Shown here: positions 1 through 21,507 of the stretch, one piece after another | Numbering within the stretch: the first letter of the stretch is position 1 | How the letters are laid out: every line of letters begins with the position of its first letter | Source of the DNA: Selaginella moellendorffii | Lineage: Eukaryota > Plantae > Lycopodiophyta | Reading direction: 5' to 3' | Length of the DNA stretch: 64,000 bases | Assembly (NCBI RefSeq): GCF_000143415.4 | Contig: NW_003314263.1 | Location: forward strand, 746,165 to 810,164 | Program-made: the position numbers and the translations under genes | Notes under the pieces: model-generated | Database searches by the model: none | Told to the model about the DNA's origin: nothing | The model's input: only the letters and a program-made list of their open reading frames with translations

Positions 1-2
1 CC

Positions 3-2654
3 GGGTGCGCAGGCGCTGGGAATCTCTCGCGGTCGCAGGAGCTCTTCGATTCCATCCCGGAGAGAGATCTTGTGTCCTGGAACACGATCATCGCGGCGTA
101 TGCCCAGAATGGGCATTGCAGAGAGGCGCTGGGATTTTTCCGGGGCTTGGATCTCGAGGGCGTGGCGCCGGATTCCATCAGCTTCGTGAGCGTTCTCGAT
201 GCCATTGCCGGGATCGAAGGGCTGGATAGAGATCTGGCAAGGGCGATTGCCATGGAAGCAATCTGGCTGGGAATTCATACCCAGATCGCTGTCGGGGCGG
301 CGCTCGTTGTGGTTTATGGAAAGATTGGCGAGGCCGAGAGCGCGGAGCATTTCTTTGATCGGATCATTGGCAGGAATGCGATATGCTGGAACGCCATGCT
401 GTCCGCGTATGCCCAATCAGGGAATCTTTGCAAAGCGCGAGAGTTCTTCGACCGAATGCCTTGCGTTGATGTGATCTCCTGGACGACGATAATTGATGCC
501 ACATCTCGCCATGAACGGCTCCAGGAGGGAAAGGATCTCTTTGATTGCATGAAACAAAGAGATTTGGCTGTCTGGAACGCTCTACTTTCGGCATTTGCCC
601 AAAAGGGGCATGTTTTGGAGTCTATAGATTTGTATGAAAGGCTCCCAGCCCACGATCTTCGTTCAAGAACATCACTGCTCATAGCTTATGCTTCGAAAGG
701 TGACATGGTTTCGTTGCTTGAGATATTTCATCAAACAAGCCACAAGGACGTCACTCTCTGGAACGCGATGATCACAGCACTTGCCCTGCTTGGGCATCTG
801 CTAGAAGCTCTAGACCTTTTCGATTCAATGGACGTTCTCAAGAACAAACTCACGTACATCATCGCCATCGACGCCTGCGGCAGCCTTGGCGATCCTGATC
901 GATGCGAGAGGATCTTCCACTTGAGCCAAGCCTGCGGATCCTTGCGTAGCAATCACGGAGTATCGTGCTCCTTGATCAAGATGTTTGGCAGATCCGGTGC
1001 GGTGGAGAGGGCCGAGCTCGTCTTCGAGCAGAAGAAGCGGCGGAGAGAGCTCTGGAACGCCATGATCGCGACGTATGCTCACAATGGATGCCTCGACGAA
1101 GCGATGCTCCTTTTCAAGACAATGCCCCGGAGAGATCTTTCCTCGTGGAGCATCGTCGCTAGAGCTCAAGCCCAGCAGGGACACTTCGATCAAGCACTGT
1201 TCTTGCTCGAGATCTCGCCAGAGATCACTATCGCGGCATGCAACGCGCTGATCACCGCGTATCTCCAGAGAGGCCACCTCGCTAGCGCGAGGCGGGTATT
1301 CGATCGGATGGAGCAGCGAGACACGAGTTCGTGGAGCTCGATCATCGCGGCCTATGCCCAGCTCGGTCACTGCGAGGAATCACTCGCGCTGTTCTGGCAG
1401 ATCGACACAACACCCGACCGCGCGACGTTCCTCGCAGCTCTCGATGCGTGCTCGGGCCTCTCGAGCCTCTCCCACTGCCGCCAAGTTCACGCAGCGGCGG
1501 ATCACACTGGCTGGATCTCCGATCTCGCCGTGGCGACTTCACTGGTGGCGAGCTATGGAAAATGCAAGGGAGTGGAGGAATCCAAGGCAGTGTTTGATCG
1601 CATCGAGCACCCATCCACTGTCTCGTGGAACTCTTTGCTAAGATCATATGCGCAAAACGGGCATCTCGCCAAGGCCGCGAGTTTCCTCGAGGAAACCATT
1701 CCTTCTCCAGACGTGGTCTCGTTTAACACGCTCGCGGCGGCTTATATCCAGCACGGGAGAGTGAACGAGGCTCTGGAGATTCTCACGAAAAGGATGCCCT
1801 GCTGGGACAGCTTCTCGCACAAAACAGCTATGGTGGCGCATGCCCAAGCCGGGCATATCCACAAAGCAAAGGAAATATTTGAGAAAATGGAGGAGCCAAG
1901 CACGGTCTCGTGGAACACCTTGATTTGTATCTTCGTCCAAGCCGGGGAATGCGAGAGTGCTGCTCGGCTCTTTCACCAAATGGATCTGGAAGGCACCCAG
2001 GCGGACAAGGTGAGTTTCTTGGCTGTTCTTGACGCCCTTGGGAGGATCACCGCTCTCCAAAAGGGAAAGCTTGTGCATGGTGAGCTCCATCACTCTAGGT
2101 TTCAATCCGACGTGATGACAAGCAATGCCGTTGTCAACTTTTATGGGAGGTGTGGATACCTTCAAGGGGCAAAGGTGGCGTTTGAGGCAACGACAAGGCA
2201 GGACGTGGTTTCATGGAATGGAATCATCTCGGTGTATGCAAACAACGGGCATTTTGAGGAAACTTTTGATCTCTTCTGGAGGATGAAGCTCGAGGGGCTT
2301 GATCCGGACGAAGTCACGTTTGTCAGTGTTCTCTCTGCATGTAGCCATGCCGGGTTCTTTGAGAGTGGTAAGTATAGTTTCCAGTCTCTTGTGCTCGATC
2401 ATCACATAGCTCCAAACTTGGAGCATTTCATGTGTGTGATCGATTTGCTTGGGCGAAGTGGCCGGCTTGACGAGGCCCAAGAGGTGATCGATAGCATGCC
2501 AATCGAGCCGGGCTCCATTGCCTACATGACGCTGCTTGGAGCTTGTAAAACTCATGGCAATAATCGGCTTGGAAACATGGCTGCTCCAAGCGCCATCACA
2601 AGAGCTTCTGGAGCATCAACTTATGTCCTTCTATCTCATATTTGTGTAGAGTGA
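3..2654 (+). CDS. PLS-class pentatricopeptide repeat protein (E-type C-terminus, no DYW), 5' end lies outside the window
   Basis: Intronless frame open from position 3. Many PPR motifs (DLVSWNTIIAAYAQNGH, VVSWNGIISVYANNGH, PDEVTFVSVLSACSHAG, HFMCVIDLLGRSGRLDEA). Ends with E-domain-like AYMTLLGACKTHG...STYVLLSHI. Confidence 0.93.
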   Translation, partial: GCAGAGNLSRSQELFDSIPERDLVSWNTIIAAYAQNGHCREALGFFRGLDLEGVAPDSISFVSVLDAIAGIEGLDRDLARAIAMEAIWLGIHTQIAVGAALVVVYGKIGEAESAEHFFDRIIGRNAICWNAMLSAYAQSGNLCKAREFFDRMPCVDVISWTTIIDATSRHERLQEGKDLFDCMKQRDLAVWNALLSAFAQKGHVLESIDLYERLPAHDLRSRTSLLIAYASKGDMVSLLEIFHQTSHKDVTLWNAMITALALLGHLLEALDLFDSMDVLKNKLTYIIAIDACGSLGDPDRCERIFHLSQACGSLRSNHGVSCSLIKMFGRSGAVERAELVFEQKKRRRELWNAMIATYAHNGCLDEAMLLFKTMPRRDLSSWSIVARAQAQQGHFDQALFLLEISPEITIAACNALITAYLQRGHLASARRVFDRMEQRDTSSWSSIIAAYAQLGHCEESLALFWQIDTTPDRATFLAALDACSGLSSLSHCRQVHAAADHTGWISDLAVATSLVASYGKCKGVEESKAVFDRIEHPSTVSWNSLLRSYAQNGHLAKAASFLEETIPSPDVVSFNTLAAAYIQHGRVNEALEILTKRMPCWDSFSHKTAMVAHAQAGHIHKAKEIFEKMEEPSTVSWNTLICIFVQAGECESAARLFHQMDLEGTQADKVSFLAVLDALGRITALQKGKLVHGELHHSRFQSDVMTSNAVVNFYGRCGYLQGAKVAFEATTRQDVVSWNGIISVYANNGHFEETFDLFWRMKLEGLDPDEVTFVSVLSACSHAGFFESGKYSFQSLVLDHHIAPNLEHFMCVIDLLGRSGRLDEAQEVIDSMPIEPGSIAYMTLLGACKTHGNNRLGNMAAPSAITRASGASTYVLLSHICVE

Positions 2655-3643
2655 ATGCTAGATTTTAAATTCTCATCTTGGTGATTGCCATATAGAAGTT
2701 TGCTCTACAGTGTTGTATACGACAACATGTCCAGAGTTATCAACACATAATGCACTAGTAATCCATTTGTCTTTCCAGTAAATGCTGTCTGACCAAACAA
2801 CCGTGTAATTTTCATCATAGATTACCATATTTCCATCTTTTTGCAACCTTAGAAAGCATCCATTGCCTTTGCTATTTGTGTGAGTGCTCCAAACAATTAC
2901 ACTCTTTGTAGATTGCAGTCAAGTTGCATGTAAAGCATGAATAAACCATTTAAAGATTGCAGAAAGTTCCCATTTGATAATGTAGAAAAGACAGAATGGT
3001 GTGGTCCATTTCTTATGCATACCTTATAATATTGCAATCGTTTTTATATGGTTTTGTAGGGTGAAATAAGCAAGTTTTACTTTATCTGGAAAAATATAAT
3101 CTGAATCGAGCTGATACTATATGCTAAACCGTCCATTGATATATTCTACAAAATCATCCATAACAAAATCAGCCATCATATCTGTAAATTCTACTTGTAA
3201 ATCAAAGCCTTTATATTTTATCTACTATTTGGTTGTGCATTTAATAATGATATTGTCATTCTTAAGGATTTACCATTTTTTGAAAACACTACTTTAGAAA
3301 GTGAAAATCCTGAGTAATAATTATCTTTTCTTCCTACGTCTTTAATAAGATCTAAAAGAAAACCCATGATTCTATGTTTAAAACTGGTTAGTTTGTTATA
3401 TTTTGGTTTAGTTAAGTAAAATTAAAATAGTTTAATTTTTATTTATTTATAAATTCTTTAATTTTAAAATGTAAAACCTTTTACAAGCGTTTGAGATGAA
3501 TATTTAATATGCCCAAATCTTTATTTCTCTTAATTTCTATATTATTTCTAAAACATTGTTACACTTTAAGTGTCATTTACGAAAATCCAAATTCTATATC
3601 ACTAAGCCTGGATCTAAATAATAAATAATATCCTCGAAGAATC

Positions 3644-5890
3644 TTAGGGCACTTGCATCGGGCGCTGCTTTGGATCCGGTTGGATGCACCACACTCCAAT
3701 GCGAAGCAGCTTCTCGGCCTTAGAGGTAGCCTCCATTTCTTGCCGCGCCCTCTTCTCTTCTAACATCTCCATTAACTTCCCAGACCGAAGCTTCTCAAAC
3801 CGCCAGGAACTTTGGGCTCCTCCCGCAAGACACACAGGTATGGAAAGCTTGAAGTCCGCTAGCCACTTCCAGCACAAGGATCCCAAAGCTGTAGATGTCC
3901 AGTTTGTCTCTCACTCTCATCTGCAACCATTCCGGAGCCATGTATCCGGGTGTTCCTCAGATCATTGTCATGACATCGCTTAGATCTCCTTGCTCTACCA
4001 TCCTCGACAGTCCAAACTCTGCTATCTTGACACCAAAGTTTTCGTCCAGGAGTAGGTTTTGCGGCTTGATGTCCAAGTGCAGGACTCTAGTGCTGCATTC
4101 CTCGTGGAGGTAGCACATCCCTCGAGCAATCTCCTCGACTATCTTGAATCTCGTGTCCCAGTTGAGCTCTTCCCGCGGCTTGTAGATCCACTTGTCTAGC
4201 GATCCGTTTGCTACGTACTCGTAAATCAGGAAGTAGTGTGATTCCTGGGAAAAAAAGCCTTTGAGTCTTACAAGGTTCTTGTGATGGATGATTCCGATCG
4301 CTCTCACCTCCGCCTTGAACTGTTTGTATCCTTGGCTCGAGAAGCTCTCCAGCCGTTTCACGGCAACGGAGAGTATCCCTTCGAAAACCGTGCCAACGCC
4401 TCCACTTGCGATTTTCTCACTGAAGGCTTTGGTTGCAGTGAGGAGCTCCGGGTAATTGAAGACGTGCACCACGTCCATAGCACCGAACGGAAACGATGGT
4501 TTGTAGTGTTTGAGATACGAGTTTATCTGTTTCTTCCAGATCACCATTGCGATGATGATTATAGCCATGGTTGCCACAGAGAAAACCGCGACGATGGCTG
4601 GCTTTGCCTGTTTTTGCTACTTGGCGACTTTGTGAGTTGAGCTTCGGAAGATCTCCAGCTTGGTACAGCTTGATCGAAAACAGCAAAGCTTGATCGACGA
4701 CGTTGCGAGTTTTGTTCAGAGAAAAAACTTCGATCATCTGGAAACAGGTAGTCGTTTCTCCTGGCTTAGCACCCCTTTGCACGAACAGTTTTTGATACAC
4801 AGGGCCATGCACGCTGCTGGAGTGACGTTGTGGAGCGCACTGGATAAATCTAGAGGTTTGTAGAAGTATCGTACTGTGGCTTCGAGCATGTAGTGATGTT
4901 GCGAGTTCTCGCAGGTTCTTCCAGGTGCTTGCATCCCTCCTTGTTCCCGGAAGAAACGTACTTCGTGAACGATGCAGAGGCATCCTTCAGCTGTCTCGAA
5001 CGAGATCCCACAGGTTCGAGTAAGCGAGCTTTTCCCGAAGAAGAGGGGGTTTAAGTTGATGCTCTTCGTGCTGTTGCCGGTGCTGAATGATCTCGAGGTA
5101 AACCGGGGCTCTCCATTCGAGTAGATCTTGAGGAACTGGTGCCCTGTTTGATCAGTAACACCACCGATCGTTGGAGTGGACCACATAACACCTTTCGTCC
5201 CGTGGATTTCCAAGCTGCTATTGACGAGGAAGAGAAATGATATCTCTTCTTCTTCCTCATCGGAGCTCCAGACCTCTCCAAAAGATCCTCAACATACTGG
5301 AGTTCAAAGCGACCGAGAAGCGGCTACCTCGAGTGAGAAGTACCCTGGCTCTTTGTTCTCCTAGAGATGCTGGCTACTAACTTCATCCCAGGGAGCACAG
5401 CATCACAGGGATGATCAAAGCTCTGCCACAGGAAAGCTCCAATTTTGCTCCGGATGACGAGATTTCCAGAGCTCTCGAGGGCCAAGACTTGCGCTCCAGA
5501 TCCTCCCGTGTTGGTCAACCACACAAAGCTTCCAATGTCACTGGAAGCACCATCTTCCTCCAAGCTCCACTCTCGAATCCACTCCAGATATTTCGAATTA
5601 GCCTTGGCTTCAGCACCCCTTCCTGCCTCCTACTTGGGAGCAAACCTCCCAAGAGTTCCAGTTCTACTTGTCAGTCTTCTACGCCATGGACGACAAGGAG
5701 AGTTTCAATCTCTACTATCTAGCAGCGGTGACATGGCGAGCTACGCGAAAACCGTCCCGAAAGGAGCGTACCTCAGCTTTACCAGCGATGGCGACCTGGT
5801 GCTGAGCGACGTGGATAGGTACCCAGCTTGTGCTTGGCTTGGCTGTGGATTCCTGTTGGCATTGTCCAAGGAGAACCAGCGGACGATCTT
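3644..5890 (-). pseudogene. G-type lectin S-domain receptor-like kinase pseudogene
   Basis: Fragments in several frames: B-lectin (FVWLTNT..LESSGNLVI..LWQSFDHPCDAVLPG), PAN-like (CMALCIKNCSCKG), TM, and kinase (VAVKRL, HHKNLVRLKG, LHLDIKPQNLLLD). DFG is changed to EFG, there is an in-frame TGA in [13 protein letters not shown], plus frameshifts. Confidence 0.88.
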
Positions 5891-6151
5891 ATGAATCGAG
5901 CTAATGATCAAGTTTAAATATTCTTAGAACCTTAGAACGAACTATGATTTACTTGAATGAGGACTTGTTCAAAGCTACTTGTCTCCCAATGGACGATCCA
6001 GCAGCAATGGCATGGCAAGCTACCTTACAAACTCAGTTGAAAAAAGTAAAAGTATAGCGAAAATCTTGTAAAAATATAAAATTCGTAGAGAGTATCAGCA
6101 ATTATAAGCTTTTGATCCCAGATGTTGCTTACACTTGTCATCAAACGCAGA

Positions 6152-6756
6152 TCACTTCATCAGGTTCACCGTTTTGGGGCACATTCCAAGGCAGGTACCA
6201 AAAGGGTTCTTCTTGCAGCAGTAGTGTTTCTTGGACGAGTCGCACAGCTGAAAGCAGGTACCAAGAGGGTTCTTGAGGCAGCAGAAGTATTTGACATTGG
6301 TCTCGCAAAGTTGCAGGCAGCCGCCGAGTCCATTCTTGAGGCAGCAGTAGTATTTGATCTTGGAGTCGCACTCCTGAACACATGATCCCAAACCATCCTT
6401 CAGGCAGCAGTACTTATCTTGGAGGCCTGCAGCATTAACAAACGGAGAAGCAGTGGCGCATAATAAATATCACAAGGACAACTCATGATCACAACAAGAG
6501 GGATCATAACGTGATCTATGTTACCGTGTTTGGAGGGGATGACAACATTGAGACCAGCAGCCTCGTTACTACCTTCACGAGACCCCTCAACGATGTAAGT
6601 CACATCGCTCTCCTTGTCAGTCACTAGAACGATATCTGCAAGTTAGACAAACGATTTGCAAGAATGCGGACACGTACGCTCAATGTTGCGAGATGCATCG
6701 GCTACGAAGAGCAGCAGGCCAAAGAGGAGGGCGGAAAGAAGAAACACTTTGGCCAT
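6152..6756 (-). CDS. Secreted cysteine-rich multi-repeat peptide precursor, copy 1 (154 aa, 4 units of CC-x7-C-x3-C)
   Basis: Exons 6756-6678, 6635-6525 and 6426-6152 with GT-AG introns of 42 and 98 nt join in frame. Product: MAKVFLLSALLFGLLLFVADA signal, then an acidic-leaning pro-region, then 4 Cys units. TATA-like TTTATAAA about 50 bp upstream. Confidence 0.8.
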
Positions 6757-7196
6757 TCTCCTTGAACTGAACCCAGAAATGACAATATAAGGTTTTGCAT
6801 CTGTTTATAAAGGGGGAACGCCTGCATGCACAAAATATCTTCTAAAAATATCTTCCAAAAATATCTTCTAATGTTTCCTCCTCTCAAAATTGGATCAACG
6901 TGCTAAAGTATTTGTCATGGTTTTTTGAGTGATAACTCATTGCCATCTGTTTGCCAAGGTGGAAGTCACAAAACCCATAGCAAGTCGTTTGACGTCAGCT
7001 GAAATATACATGGTTGGTCTCAAGTATCTGGCACCCATGAAAATCGATATCTAAACAAGGTGCTTGCGCTAAAGCCAAGTAAATGATCGATGGCATCACC
7101 TGTCTGAAAAACCTCTAGAGCTTCTTGGTAGCATCATGTCTATTTCCAAATGGAATAGGGATGCAAGCCAATGTCCCCTTCACCCGAGGGGAACCG

Positions 7197-7507
7197 NNNN
7201 NNNNNNNNNNNNNNNNNNNNNNNNNNNNNNNNNNNNNNNNNNNNNNNNNNNNNNNNNNNNNNNNNNNNNNNNNNNNNNNNNNNNNNNNNNNNNNNNNNNN
7301 NNNNNNNNNNNNNNNNNNNNNNNNNNNNNNNNNNNNNNNNNNNNNNNNNNNNNNNNNNNNNNNNNNNNNNNNNNNNNNNNNNNNNNNNNNNNNNNNNNNN
7401 NNNNNNNNNNNNNNNNNNNNNNNNNNNNNNNNNNNNNNNNNNNNNNNNNNNNNNNNNNNNNNNNNNNNNNNNNNNNNNNNNNNNNNNNNNNNNNNNNNNN
7501 NNNNNNN
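7197..7507. other. Assembly gap (N run) at the centre of the inverted duplication
   Basis: 311 Ns. Confidence 1.
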
Positions 7508-8029
7508 AGGGCTCATTTGTATGATGAGAAAGTGGACAAATTGAGCCAAAGAGAACAGATCCCTCTCACCATAAGTGACATTGACTTGCATTCTTATTCC
7601 ATTTTGAAATAGACATGATGCTACCAAGAAGCTCTAGAGGTTTTCTAGACGATGCCATCGATCATTTACTCGGCTTTAGCGCAAGCACTTTGTTTAAAAT
7701 AACAAAACCCAGGCTGACAAATCAAATAAAAAGTGATACGCATATCGATTTTCATGGGTGCCAGATACTTGAGACCAACCATGTATATTTCAGCTGATGT
7801 CAAACGACTTGCTATGGGTTTTGTGACTTCCACCTTGGCAAACAGATGGCAATGAGTTATCACTCAAAAAACCATGACAAATACTTTAACACGTTATAAT
7901 CTTGGGATCGAAGAAAAACCAATTTTGGGAATCAGAGGAGGAAACATTAGAAGATATTTTTCAGGCGTTCCCCCTTTATAAATAGATGCAAAACTTTATA
8001 TTTTCATTTCTGGGTTCAGTTCAAGGAGA

Positions 8030-8568
8030 ATGGCCAAAGTGTTTCTTCTTTCCGCCCTCCTCGTTGGCCTGCTGCTCTTCGTAGCCAATGCATCTCGCAA
8101 CACTCAGCATACGTGTCCGCATTCTTGCAAATCGTTTGTCTAACTTGCAGATATCGTTCTAGTGACTGACAAGGAGAGCGATGTGACTTACATCGTTGAG
8201 GGGTCTCGTGAAGGTAGTAACGAGGCTGCTGGTCTCAATGTTGTCATCCCCTCCAAACACGGTAACATAGATCACGTTATGATCCCTCTTGTTGTGATCA
8301 TGAGCTGTTCTTGTGATATTTATTATGCGCCACTGCTTCTCCGTTTGTTAATAATGCAAGCCTCCAAGATACGTACTGCTGCCTGAGGAACGCCTTTGGA
8401 TGTCTTCAGAAGTGCGACTCCAACATCAATTACTTCTGCTGCCTCAAGAATGCAATAGGTGGCTGCTTACAGATGTGCGACTCATCCAAGAAACACTACT
8501 GCTGCAAGAAGAACCTTTTTGGCACCTGCGTTGAAATGTGCCCCAAAACGGTGAACCTGATGAAGTGA
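8030..8568 (+). pseudogene. Cys-rich multi-repeat peptide precursor, copy 2 (3 units, both splice sites damaged)
   Basis: Mirror of copy 1. Intron-1 donor GT changed to AT (8109) and intron-2 acceptor CAG changed to CAA. Exon-3 frame intact: YCCLRNAFGCLQKC-DSNINYF-CCLKNAIGGCLQMC-DSSKKHY-CCKKNLFGTCVEMC-PKTVNLMK*. Confidence 0.7.
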
Positions 8569-9193
8569 TCTGCGTTTGATGGCAAGTGTAAGCAACATCT
8601 GGGATCAAAAGCTTATAATTGCTGATACTCTCTACAAATTTTATATTTTTACAAGATTTTCGCTATACTTTTACTTTTTTCAACTGAGTTTGTAAGGTAG
8701 CTTGCCATGCCACTGCTGCTGGATCGTCCAATTATAGTTCGTTCTAAGGTTCTAAGAATATATAAACTTGAATTTTAGCTCGATTCATAAGATCGTCCGC
8801 TGGTTCTCCTTGGACAACGCCAACAGGAATCCACAAAGGGATGTCCGCTTGTTGTGGCAAAGAGTCAAGGGTGGCAAAGGGAAGCTTGTGGTGGATCAGA
8901 TTCAAAGGTTGCAAGCCTGTGAACACAGGCAAAGGTGGCAAGCCTACAAGCAAAAGGCAAAGGTGCTGCCAAGAGTAGAGAACTGCTGTTTGCATGAACC
9001 TACGCACCCGAAATACTACTCGATAGCCCTGCTCATGATCCACTAGAGTTGCAAGCTCATGATCAAATGGCAGTTCTAAGCAATACCATTTCCACTTGTT
9101 GAAGAATGGGTTTCCCCAACCCAAAAACTCTGCCTTCCTGGACCAGCACCATTGAGAGACCAACTCGATAACGATGGCAGTAACGATGTCCCT

Positions 9194-9363: not shown

Positions 9364-10391
9364 TTAAGCATGGCCTTGCATCTGCCGCAAACGTCGTGAG
9401 CTTGTTACTTCCATTGAATCAAAGAGGTCCATGAAGCTGGACAAGTACTGTGACCATCGCGTTCCAAAGGGTGACGTTCTTGTAACTTGTTTGATAAAAG
9501 ATCTCAAGTAGCGGATCCATGTATAAGCCATGGGTAGGAGCGAAGATCGGAAGTCATTCGAACAGATCCCCCTTTTGGGCATTAAGATAAGCGCATTCCA
9601 GACCGCTAAATCTCTTTGTTTCATGCAATCAAAGAGATCCTTTGCCTCCTGGAGCTCTTCTTGGCGAGGTGTGGCATCTATGATCGTCGTCCATGAGATC
9701 ACATCCAAGCAAGGGATTCGAACGAAGAGCTTTCGCGCTTTGCACAGCATCGCGTTCCAGCAGATCGCATTCCTGCCAATGATCCGATCAAAGCACTGCT
9801 CCGCGCTCTCGGCCTCGCCAGTCCTTCCATAAACCACAACGATCGCTGTCCCCACAGCGATCTGGGTGTAAATTCCCAGCCAGATCGCTTCCATGGCGAT
9901 CGCCTTTCCCAGATCTCATCCCGGCAATGGCATCGAGAACGGTCACGAAGCTGATGGAATCCGGCGCCATCCAAGCCCCGGTAGAATCGCAGCGCCTCTC
10001 TGCAATGCCCGTTCTGGGCATACGCCGAGATGATTGTTCCAGGACACAAGATCTCTCTCCGGCATGGAATCGAAGAGCTCCTGCGACCGCGGGAGGTCCC
10101 AGCGCCCGCGTACCCGGCGATCAGCGCATTCCAGGAGACCACATCGCGCAGAGCCATTCGCGTGAAAACTTCCCTGACTCTGACAAGATCCCCTGTCTGG
10201 GCAAATGCTCGAAGCAAGATCGTCCACGAGTAGACGTTGTGGCGGGCGGTGCCGCTGTGGAAGACGATCTCTGCATCGGGCAGGCTGCCGCAGACGCTGT
10301 ACATGCGAATGACGAGATTCGCGATGCGATCCAGGCCTGCCCTGGCGATCTGCGAGTGAAGAATGCGCCTCCGTGGGAAAGAAAGAACCAT
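9364..10391 (-). pseudogene. Truncated, frameshifted inverted copy of the PPR gene at the window start
   Basis: MEAIWLGIYTQIAVGTAIVVVYGRTGEAESAEQCFDRIIGRNAICWNAML nearly matches ORF 72-2654. Multiple deletions and frameshifts, and it ends after about a third of the gene. Confidence 0.88.
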
Positions 10392-20841: not shown

Positions 20842-21507
20842 TTAGTAGCAATGGGGGCCATATCCACAAACGGTTGTGATCGGGCAGCATTTGAACAAAA
20901 ACAAGCAGGATGGAAACATACAGCAGCATTTCTGACCATACCCACATGGTGGGCAAAGTGGCGATGGTGGTGGAGGTGGTGGGGGTGGGGGTGAGGGTGA
21001 GGGTGGTGGTGGCGGTGGTGGTGGGGGTGAGGGTGGTGGAGGTGATGCTGTTGGTGGTGATGGTGGTGGGGGTGAGGGTGGCGATGATGGATGTGGCGGG
21101 GAGGGTGATGGTGATGGTGGTGGGGCTGAGGGTGAAGGTGAAGGTACTGGTGCTCGTGATGGTGATTGGGTAGAACCTTGACCAAAGCTTATGCTTGACT
21201 GATATTCATTGGGTACTTTCATCTCTATGATACTACTCAACGATTCCAGCATTTTACCTCCCAGACTATTGGAGCTAACCATGGATTTACCAAGAATCAT
21301 CAGCCTACACACATTATTCTTGAATAACTCATGCCTGTTTGCTCCCTTGTTTACGGTGGTGCCATCATCCTTCCCACACCATTCCCTGAGTAAACCTTCC
21401 GTGGAACAAGCATTTTGATTCTTGAGAGTTGAACCAGCAGTGGATTGAGTGAGGATCACAGTGAAGAGCAGGAGACAGCACCAATGGGAAGAACTGGAAG
21501 AAGCCAT
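20842..21507 (-). CDS. Secreted protein: I29-prodomain remnant + SP/PPP-rich linker + truncated granulin-like domain
   Basis: Intronless 221 aa. Signal peptide, LLREWCGK..NRHELFKNNV, (SPPPP)n tract, then C-x2-C-x5-CCC-x4-C-x5-CC-x5-C-x5-C. Confidence 0.7.
   Translation of the reverse strand: MASSSSSHWCCLLLFTVILTQSTAGSTLKNQNACSTEGLLREWCGKDDGTTVNKGANRHELFKNNVCRLMILGKSMVSSNSLGGKMLESLSSIIEMKVPNEYQSSISFGQGSTQSPSRAPVPSPSPSAPPPSPSPSPPHPSSPPSPPPPSPPTASPPPPSPPPPPPPPPSPSPPPPPPPPPSPLCPPCGYGQKCCCMFPSCLFLFKCCPITTVCGYGPHCY

What the first reader, a model, noticed from the sequence alone, without database searches (positions are those of the whole stretch)
6152..6756. Secreted polyprotein of tandem ~20-aa four-Cys units (CC-x7-C-x3-C): candidate unrecognised disulfide-peptide family
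Seen: splicing three exons gives signal peptide + ~45-aa pro-region + KY-CCLKDGLGSCVQEC-DSKIKYY-CCLKNGLGGCLQLC-ETNVKYF-CCLKNPLGTCFQLC-DSSKKHY-CCKKNPFGTCLGMC-PKTVNLMK. The ORF track misses this because of a 42-nt intron. Known: Impatiens Ib-AMPs are 20-aa CC-x8-C-x3-C antimicrobial peptides cut from a multi-unit precursor. The spacing here does not match defensin, thionin, hevein, knottin or snakin patterns. Inference: a convergent or distantly related multi-peptide antimicrobial or inhibitor precursor, either processed in the short D/E-x-x-x-K linkers or acting as a concatemer.
Basis: partly seen in the sequence, partly recalled or inferred. Interest (0 to 1): 0.85.

Follow-up and report, generated by a model that had tools for sequence, protein, structure and literature searches.

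The report
Spikemoss secreted cysteine hairpin-repeat protein
This is a real three-exon gene of the spikemoss Selaginella moellendorffii for a small secreted protein made of four back-to-back 21-residue, four-cysteine units. It belongs to an unstudied family seen only in this species, and the units more likely fold together as one disulfide-locked domain than get cut into separate Ib-AMP-like peptides.

Summary
A minus-strand gene at 6756-6152 encodes a signal peptide, an acidic pro-region of about 40 aa, and four tandem CC-x7-C-x3-C units joined by 7-aa linkers.

It is already a RefSeq model: XP_024518413.1, LOC9660742, "uncharacterized protein", Selaginella moellendorffii. Paralogue comparison favours the RefSeq site.

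The gene belongs to a family of at least 25 gene models on at least 7 scaffolds. All are from this one species, in searches of 5.8 and 1.84 billion proteins. There is no Pfam family, PDB relative or paper.

The Ib-AMP kinship fails every testable defining feature except "signal peptide plus several units". A granulin link, suggested by UniRef's automatic names for some members, is not supported statistically.

AlphaFold2 models the Cys-rich domain as one unit of four beta-hairpins (pLDDT 82, pTM 0.67) with no known fold match. The invariant 7-aa linkers, position-specific unit conservation and near-neutral unit cores favour an intact concatemer over a processed polyprotein.

Function is untested; defence is the most likely role. 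The scan has already found this family on other DNA of the same genome.

The parts
6804..6809 (-). TATAAA box, 48-53 nt upstream of the ATG. It is conserved in copy 2 and in the L001 paralogue.
   Evidence: read directly from the sequence
6678..6756 (-). Exon 1. It holds the ATG and the signal peptide: residues 1-21, mean Kyte-Doolittle 2.9 over residues 4-18, A-x-A before the predicted cut ADA|SR. The last base is the first base of a split codon.
6624..6677 (-). Intron 1 as in RefSeq: GT..AG, 54 nt.
   Evidence: RefSeq models of four loci use the downstream acceptor, and the 12-nt stretch is 11 nt in a paralogue.
6525..6623 (-). Exon 2: the acidic pro-region (net charge -3 in this copy, -2 to -6 across the family).
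6427..6524 (-). Intron 2: GT..AG, 98 nt.
6152..6426 (-). Exon 3: four tandem units and the conserved tail C-P-K-T-V-N-L-M-K, with the TGA stop at 6154-6152. The Cys-rich domain is 86 aa with 16 Cys, pI 8.7, and about 9.56 kDa with 8 disulfides.
6368..6409 (-). Unit 1 core, CC-x7-C-x3-C (residues 66-79 of P0001).
6305..6346 (-). Unit 2 core (residues 87-100).
6242..6283 (-). Unit 3 core (residues 108-121).
6179..6220 (-). Unit 4 core (residues 129-142), followed by the family-invariant P-K.
8030..8568 (+). Second, head-to-head copy with three units. The canonical intron-1 donor (G to A at 8109) and the intron-2 acceptor (G to A at 8359) are lost. In-frame substitute sites lie 6 and 9 nt downstream, as used by the old JGI model SELMODRAFT_404114 (P0016). 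It is either a weakened gene or a young pseudogene.
5844..8835 (.). Inverted duplication carrying the two copies. The arms are about 5844-7175 and 7577-8835, 91-99% complementary, around an assembly gap (N-run 7197-7507).

Best explanation
LOC9660742 is a functional member of a Selaginella-restricted family of small secreted cysteine-rich repeat proteins.

Proposed mechanism, with each step marked as shown or inferred:
1. The pre-protein enters the ER through a cleavable signal peptide. This is inferred from the sequence.
2. An acidic pro-region of about 40 aa precedes a basic domain of about 86 aa made of four 21-aa units. This is shown in the sequence.
3. Each unit forms a beta-hairpin around the near-invariant L-K-N-G-[FY]-G turn. 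This is predicted by AlphaFold2.
4. Each unit is closed by its own two disulfides. This is inferred: every unit, including the first and the last, has the same four Cys, and whole units can be lost without leaving an odd Cys.
5. The hairpins and the fixed 7-aa linkers pack into one rigid, disulfide-braced rod. That rod is secreted and works intact, possibly after loss of the pro-region. Its most likely role is as an extracellular defence protein that binds a microbial surface or enzyme. This step is inference only.
For: **The gene is real**
- The RefSeq protein P0001 is 100% identical over exon 3.
- The TATA box and gene structure are conserved among copies.
- All Cys are invariant. dN/dS is 0.2-0.66 in all ten pairwise exon-3 comparisons among five copies.

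**The family**
- There are at least 25 models, all from S. moellendorffii.
- Among 59 units, the third and fourth Cys are always C-x3-C, linkers are always 7 aa, and position 7 is Asn in 55 of 59.

**One domain rather than beads to be cut**
- AlphaFold2 on the Cys-rich domain with 16 sequences gives pLDDT 82, pTM 0.67 and 8 strands. Ten-residue block means are 85-92 from residue 21 to 80, a stretch that spans the linkers.
- The full-length run gives the same strand pattern.
- First and last units match first and last units of other subfamilies in 34 of 34 cases. Same-position identity between subfamilies (56%) exceeds unit-to-unit identity within a protein (49%).
- Linkers have no dibasic sites and no spacer.
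- Unit cores are -2, 0, 0 and +4, while the whole domain is about +6, because many of the lysines sit in the linkers and tail.

**Defence-like evolution**
- The genes sit in clusters with unit gain and loss and with mosaic divergence. Copy 1 against copy 2 is 100% identical in exon 2, 95-98% in the introns, and 88% in exon 3 plus a 63-nt unit deletion.
- An acidic pro-region is paired with a basic mature domain.
Against: - I have no RNA or protein evidence for this copy.
- AlphaFold2 is known to be unreliable for disulfide-rich peptides (PMC11035057). The alignments were shallow (8-16 close relatives), and two of the five models were poor.
- I could not inspect coordinates, so the disulfide pairing and the packing of the hairpins are not verified.
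- Short linkers do not exclude processing. From my own knowledge, the Nicotiana alata proteinase-inhibitor precursor is cut in 5-aa linkers.
- Nothing bears directly on function.
Confidence: 0.55

Rival explanations
1. It is a polyprotein precursor. The linkers are cut, for example after the conserved D/E that follows the fourth Cys and before the aromatic pair. This would release four two-disulfide peptides of about 17-24 aa that act separately, as Ib-AMPs do (convergent).
For: - Each unit carries a complete set of four Cys.
- The number of units varies from 2 to 4 among paralogues.
- There is a precedent for a multi-unit plant precursor with a CC...C-x3-C framework (PMC10136942).
- An acid residue follows the fourth Cys in all 42 inter-unit linkers.
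Against: - The linker is invariably 7 aa and is modelled inside beta-strands at high confidence.
- There are no dibasic sites or acidic spacers.
- The released cores would be neutral or acidic (-2, 0, 0, +4), unlike cationic antimicrobial peptides.
- Units are conserved by position across subfamilies.
- Fifteen of the 42 linker acids are Glu, which from my own knowledge is a poor site for asparaginyl endopeptidase.
Confidence: 0.2
2. It is a strongly diverged granulin-type beta-hairpin stack. It would derive from the plant granulin domain found at the C-terminus of RD21-like proteases, by tandem duplication of one hairpin.
For: - UniRef names at least 9 family members "Granulins domain-containing protein".
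- Each unit is predicted to be a beta-hairpin.
- A genuine plant granulin (P0023:360-407, Pfam Granulin E 4.7e-9) contains CC-x7-C-x4-CC. The best local alignments fall exactly on that hairpin.
- An RD21-related gene pair lies 13 kb away in the window.
Against: - Pfam Granulin gives no hit at E<=10 for 14 members.
- hhalign probability is 6% over 10 columns, and BLASTP E is 0.2.
- No granulin chain is matched by sequence in the PDB or by fold (Foldseek none; VIA-align Z<=2.7).
- The granulin ladder needs single-Cys end caps (C, C, CC...CC, C, C). Here the first and last units have the same four Cys as the inner ones, which argues for bonds within units.
Confidence: 0.12
3. It is a secreted protein with a non-defence role, such as a signalling ligand or a cell-wall or structural component. 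Alternatively, this particular copy is silent.
For: Many plant cysteine-rich secreted proteins are ligands (my own knowledge). There is no expression evidence for this copy. The neighbouring copy 2 has lost both canonical splice sites.
Against: - Clustered, copy-number-variable, species-restricted families with relaxed constraint (dN/dS up to 0.66) are more typical of defence genes than of conserved ligands.
- Copy 1 has an intact ORF, intact splice sites and a TATA box.
- Unchecked notes from this scan report transcription of paralogues.
Confidence: 0.13

Closest known systems
Ib-AMP1-4 precursor of Impatiens balsamina
   Same: Both have a signal peptide followed by several tandem units of about 20 aa, each with four Cys beginning with a CC doublet and ending C-x3-C (PMC10136942).
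   Different: - Ib-AMPs are CC-x8-C-x3-C; here the spacing is x6 or x7.
- Ib-AMPs carry 5-6 Arg (+4 or +5); here the unit cores are about neutral.
- Ib-AMP units are separated by acidic spacers of 16-35 aa; here the linkers are fixed at 7 aa.
- Ib-AMP1 is a loop without beta-structure; here hairpins are predicted.
- There is no detectable sequence similarity (hhalign probability 0.15%).
Granulin modules (animal progranulin; C-terminal granulin domain of plant RD21-like proteases, PF00396)
   Same: Both are cysteine-rich beta-hairpin repeats with CC doublets and a G-aromatic-G-C turn motif. Progranulin is also a tandem array. UniRef's automatic names call some members granulin-domain proteins.
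   Different: There is no Pfam hit, hhalign probability is 6%, and no fold match was found. Granulin has a 12-Cys ladder with single-Cys end caps, whereas this family has 4n Cys with identical end units.
Multi-modular alpha-hairpinin precursors (e.g. Sm-AMP-X, vicilin-buried peptides)
   Same: These are plant precursors with several tandem four-Cys, two-disulfide modules (named in PMC10136942).
   Different: The hairpinin motif is C-x3-C...C-x3-C in a helix-loop-helix. Here the motif is CC...C-x3-C and beta-strands are predicted.

Membership tests
Ib-AMP (Impatiens) polyprotein | Unit motif CC-x8-C-x3-C | tested here: not met
   Of 59 units, 33 are CC-x6-C and 26 are CC-x7-C; none is x8. C-x3-C is always present. 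The definition is from PMC10136942.
Ib-AMP (Impatiens) polyprotein | Highly basic 20-aa peptides (5-6 Arg) | tested here: not met
   The unit cores of P0001 carry net -2, 0, 0 and +4. The basic residues are Lys, many of them in the linkers and tail.
Ib-AMP (Impatiens) polyprotein | Units separated by acidic propeptides of 16-35 aa | tested here: not met
   All inter-unit linkers are exactly 7 aa.
Ib-AMP (Impatiens) polyprotein | Signal peptide plus several units in one precursor | tested here: met
Ib-AMP (Impatiens) polyprotein | Sequence similarity to Ib-AMP1 | tested here: not met
   hhalign of A3 against Ib-AMP1 (sequence taken from the paper): probability 0.15%.
Ib-AMP (Impatiens) polyprotein | Proteolytic release of single units; C1-C3 and C2-C4 bonds | not testable with these tools
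   Needs mass spectrometry and disulfide mapping.
Granulin (PF00396) | Match to the Pfam Granulin profile | tested here: not met
   There is no hit at E<=10 for exon 3 or for 13 family proteins. A real plant granulin (P0023) scores E 4.7e-9 in the same library.
Granulin (PF00396) | Twelve Cys as C-C-CC-CC-CC-CC-C-C forming a six-disulfide ladder | tested here: not met
   The pattern here is (CC-x6/7-C-x3-C)n with identical end units. The definition is from PMC11035057.
Granulin (PF00396) | Similarity to a bona fide plant granulin domain | tested here: inconclusive
   hhalign gives probability 6% over 10 columns and BLASTP gives E 0.2. Both alignments fall on the CC-hairpin. Only one granulin sequence was available as the target.
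Granulin (PF00396) | Stacked beta-hairpin fold | tested here: inconclusive
   Four hairpins are predicted. No granulin or any other chain was matched: Foldseek none, VIA-align Z<=2.7, atlas TM<=0.42.
Alpha-hairpinins | C-x3-C...C-x3-C motif in a helical hairpin | tested here: not met
   The first pair is CC, not C-x3-C. The predicted structure is all-beta.
Plant secreted cysteine-rich proteins (generic class) | N-terminal signal peptide, small size, even number of conserved Cys | tested here: met
   150 aa; hydrophobic core at residues 4-18 and A-x-A; 16 invariant Cys. No signal-peptide predictor was available.

The most novel reading that the evidence does not exclude
The family is a previously undescribed disulfide-rich module confined to Selaginella: a self-contained beta-hairpin of about 14-17 aa closed by two internal disulfides. 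It would be used either as a concatenated rod with no counterpart in the PDB, or as a polyprotein that releases a new class of two-disulfide plant peptides convergent with Ib-AMPs, and it would have antimicrobial or enzyme-inhibiting activity.
Probability: 0.2. Interest if true: 0.65.

Novelty: new variant of a known kind. Interest (0 to 1): 0.42.

Why it matters
Lycophyte defence and signalling peptides are almost unstudied. This family has at least 25 gene models and no relatives elsewhere. If its unit is confirmed as an autonomous two-disulfide hairpin, or as a new hairpin-rod fold, it would add a new scaffold to plant cysteine-rich proteins and a compact template for peptide engineering. 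As it stands, it is an annotated but uncharacterised lineage-specific gene family with a plausible but untested role.

Tried and rejected
**RNA evidence**
No place was reported as human-like.
- The supplements of the Selaginella expression-atlas preprint do not contain the locus numbers.

**Joined spliced model**
Exons were searched by reference. The spliced proteins I used are database entries returned by the tools.

**Family and structure searches that gave nothing**
- Pfam gave only a noise hit, CC4_RECK at E 1.
- PDB sequence searches gave nothing or noise.
- The ESM Atlas by features gave one unnamed plant cluster at 0.81, which is chance level, and nothing for P0018.
- Foldseek, VIA-align and the atlas fold search gave no meaningful match.

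**Readings considered and rejected**
- Granulin homology is not supported.
- Ib-AMP homology is rejected.
- A metallothionein-like or metal-binding reading is rejected because of the signal peptide. This is inference only.
- Strong positive selection on exon 3 is rejected. dN/dS is below 1 in all pairs. The excess divergence of exon 3 between the two window copies affects synonymous sites too (dS 0.19), so it points to a mosaic or gene-conversion history.
- P0012, an ENA 622-aa translation of a tandem repeat that matched the profile at E 2.8e-6, lacks the CC doublet and I judge it spurious.

- Other lycophyte genomes could not be searched. The contig collections on offer are viral, metagenomic or prokaryotic.

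Full report
**Observation**

On the minus strand the region reads as a compact three-exon gene.

| Part | Coordinates | Notes |
|---|---|---|
| Exon 1 | 6756-6678 | M-A-K, a 15-residue hydrophobic core and A-D-A |
| Intron 1 | from GT at 6677 | acceptor discussed below |
| Exon 2 | ends at 6525 | acidic pro-region |
| Intron 2 | 6524-6427 | GT..AG, 98 nt |
| Exon 3 | 6426-6152 | four units and the stop |

- Tandem Repeats Finder sees the 63-nt period (3 copies, 72% matches, score 163).
- A TATAAA box lies at 6809-6804.

**Identity and gene model**

- A search with exon 3 by reference returned a 150-aa protein that is 100% identical. It is XP_024518413.1, "uncharacterized protein LOC9660742", Selaginella moellendorffii. 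So the gene is already annotated.
- That model joins exon 1 to TG-ACT-GAC, using the acceptor TTCTAG|TG.
- RefSeq models of three further loci use the same acceptor (P0002, P0024, P0025/P0026). An old JGI model (P0003) uses the upstream one.
- In the paralogue in L001, the stretch between the two acceptors is 11 nt instead of 12. The upstream acceptor there would read straight into TAG. The stretch therefore behaves as intron.
- Intron 1 of two other paralogues is about 52 nt by my count of the sequence printed, so 42 nt would be an outlier.
Exons were searched by reference, and the spliced sequences I used are database proteins returned by the tools.

**The family**

- Three searches found only S. 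moellendorffii proteins:
  - word-indexed search with exon 3;
  - word-indexed search with a 13-sequence alignment;
  - a full HMMER scan of 1.84 billion cluster representatives with the family profile.
- With cluster members, there are at least 25 gene models on at least 7 scaffolds. Some are probably allelic, because from my own knowledge this assembly holds both haplotypes.
- The one non-Selaginella hit (P0012) is a translated tandem repeat without the CC doublet. I regard it as spurious.
- Three subfamilies share the same plan: signal peptide, acidic pro-region (net -2 to -6), and 2-4 units.
- Across 59 units:
  - the consensus is [YH]-Y-C-C-L-K-N-G-[FY]-G-(S)-C-[LV]-Q-[ML]-C-[DE]-x4;
  - the CC-to-C spacing is 6 residues in 33 units and 7 in 26;
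  - C-x3-C and the 7-residue linker never vary.
- Units are conserved by position. The nearest unit in another subfamily is first-for-first and last-for-last in 34 of 34 cases. Same-position identity between subfamilies (56%) exceeds unit-to-unit identity within one protein (49%). The array is therefore older than the subfamilies and has not been homogenised.
- dN/dS over exon 3 is 0.2-0.66 in all ten pairwise comparisons among five copies. The Cys are invariant. The family is under purifying, though relaxed, selection.

**Local context**

- A second copy lies head to head at 8030-8568. The two copies sit in the arms of an inverted duplication, about 5844-7175 and 7577-8835, around an N-run at 7197-7507. 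This could be real or an assembly or haplotype artefact.
- Copy 1 against copy 2:

| Region | Identity |
|---|---|
| Exon 2 | 100% |
| Intron 1 | 98% |
| Intron 2 | 95% |
| Exon 3 | 88%, plus a 63-nt (one-unit) deletion |

- Since dS in exon 3 is also raised (0.19), this is a mosaic or gene-conversion pattern, not positive selection.
- Copy 2 has lost the canonical intron-1 donor (8109) and intron-2 acceptor (8359). In-frame substitute sites 6 and 9 nt downstream exist and are used in JGI model P0016.
- A further cluster of three full copies and one fragment lies on the same 4.46-Mb scaffold, in L001 (GL377567.1:714416-738950). It is interleaved with Peptidase_S28 and FtsJ/Spb1 genes.

**Structure**

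- AlphaFold2 on full-length P0001 with 8 sequences was poor overall (pLDDT 50). It still placed eight strands in the Cys-rich part, where confidence was about 70.
- On the Cys-rich domain alone with 16 sequences it gave:
  - pLDDT 82 and pTM 0.67, with three of five models above 80;
  - eight 6-residue strands, which make four hairpins;
  - ten-residue block means of 85-92 from residue 21 to 80, a stretch that spans the linkers.
- No solved or predicted structure matches: Foldseek against the PDB found none, VIA-align against 48,161 chains gave Z<=2.7, and the atlas gave TM<=0.42.
- Caveats:
  - the alignments are shallow;
  - AlphaFold is documented to mis-handle disulfide-rich peptides (PMC11035057);
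  - I could not read the coordinates, so the disulfide pairing is not known.
- From sequence alone, the identical four-Cys pattern of the first, inner and last units, and the clean loss of whole units, argue that each unit closes its own two disulfides.

**Concatemer or polyprotein**

For an intact domain:
- the invariant 7-aa linker, with a conserved acid after the fourth Cys and an aromatic residue before the CC, modelled as part of the strands;
- no dibasic sites or spacers;
- position-specific conservation of units;
- charge: the unit cores are -2, 0, 0 and +4, while the domain as a whole is about +6 with pI 8.7, because many of the lysines are in the linkers and tail.

For processing:
- self-contained units;
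- a variable number of units;
- the Ib-AMP precedent.

I put the intact domain at about 0.55 and processing at about 0.2.

**Comparison with known families**

- Ib-AMPs (definition from PMC10136942) share only "signal peptide plus several CC...C-x3-C units". Spacing, charge, spacer length and sequence similarity (hhalign 0.15%) all fail.
- Granulin:
  - UniRef's automatic names call at least 9 members "Granulins domain-containing protein".
  - To test this I fetched a genuine plant granulin, P0023, an RD21-like protease with Pfam Granulin at E 4.7e-9.
  - Its central hairpin is CC-x7-C-x4-CC, and the best local alignments fall there. However, hhalign probability is 6% and BLASTP E is 0.2.
  - Pfam Granulin gives no hit in 14 members, and the Cys pattern lacks granulin's single-Cys end caps.
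  - I leave this as an unproven lead at about 0.12.
- Alpha-hairpinins fail on both motif and secondary structure.

**Function**

Nothing tests function. The following fit a defence role, which I hold at about 0.4:
- secretion;
- an acidic pro-region paired with a basic mature domain;
- clustered and copy-variable genes;
- relaxed constraint;
- restriction to one species.

Signalling or structural roles remain open.

**Earlier findings of this scan**

After my own analysis I found that this scan had already described the same family on other DNA of this genome. One note covers the cluster just upstream of this window. Those notes report transcription and correct splicing of paralogues and reach the same "one folded domain" reading. 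They are unchecked AI notes. I could not test the RNA claims, and I do not count their agreement as independent evidence.

**Verdict**

It is a new variant of a known kind (plant secreted cysteine-rich repeat proteins). It is annotated but uncharacterised, and of moderate interest.

Noticed in passing
window 8030-8568 (+): A head-to-head second copy with three units. Its canonical intron-1 donor (8109) and intron-2 acceptor (8359) are both mutated, but in-frame substitute sites lie 6 and 9 nt downstream. The only model is the old JGI one (SELMODRAFT_404114, P0016), which also reads on past the normal C-terminus.
   Followed up: partly
window 5844-8835, N-run 7197-7507: A near-palindromic inverted duplication with arms of about 1.3 kb and an assembly gap at its centre. 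It could be a true inverted duplicate or two haplotypes joined head to head.
   Followed up: partly
window 6832-6871: A 13-nt tandem repeat (3.1 copies, 92% matches) in the promoter region of copy 1. It is absent from copy 2.
   Followed up: no
window 1-5408 vs L001:18958-24239: These stretches are 96-97% identical, in a region of PPR and FtsJ/kinase genes next to the L001 cluster. Other pieces match in inverted order. This points to a segmentally duplicated and rearranged neighbourhood.
   Followed up: partly
L001:10001-14535: RefSeq isoform X1 of LOC9661801 (P0002) joins exon 1 of one family copy (at 10001) to exons 2-3 of another copy 4 kb away, across an opposite-strand FtsJ gene. The downstream copy has its own ATG exon (about 13943). 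The model is probably chimeric. P0009 (610 aa) is another fused model.
   Followed up: partly
window 20845-21507 (-): The ORF noted by another reader as the granulin part of a "split RD21" gets no Pfam Granulin hit at E<=10. Its Cys-rich end (C-x2-C-x5-CCC-x4-C-x5-CC-x5-C-x5-C) is shorter than a normal plant granulin.
   Followed up: partly
window 36001-44000: G+C drops to 0.32-0.34, against 0.42-0.57 elsewhere in the window.
   Followed up: no
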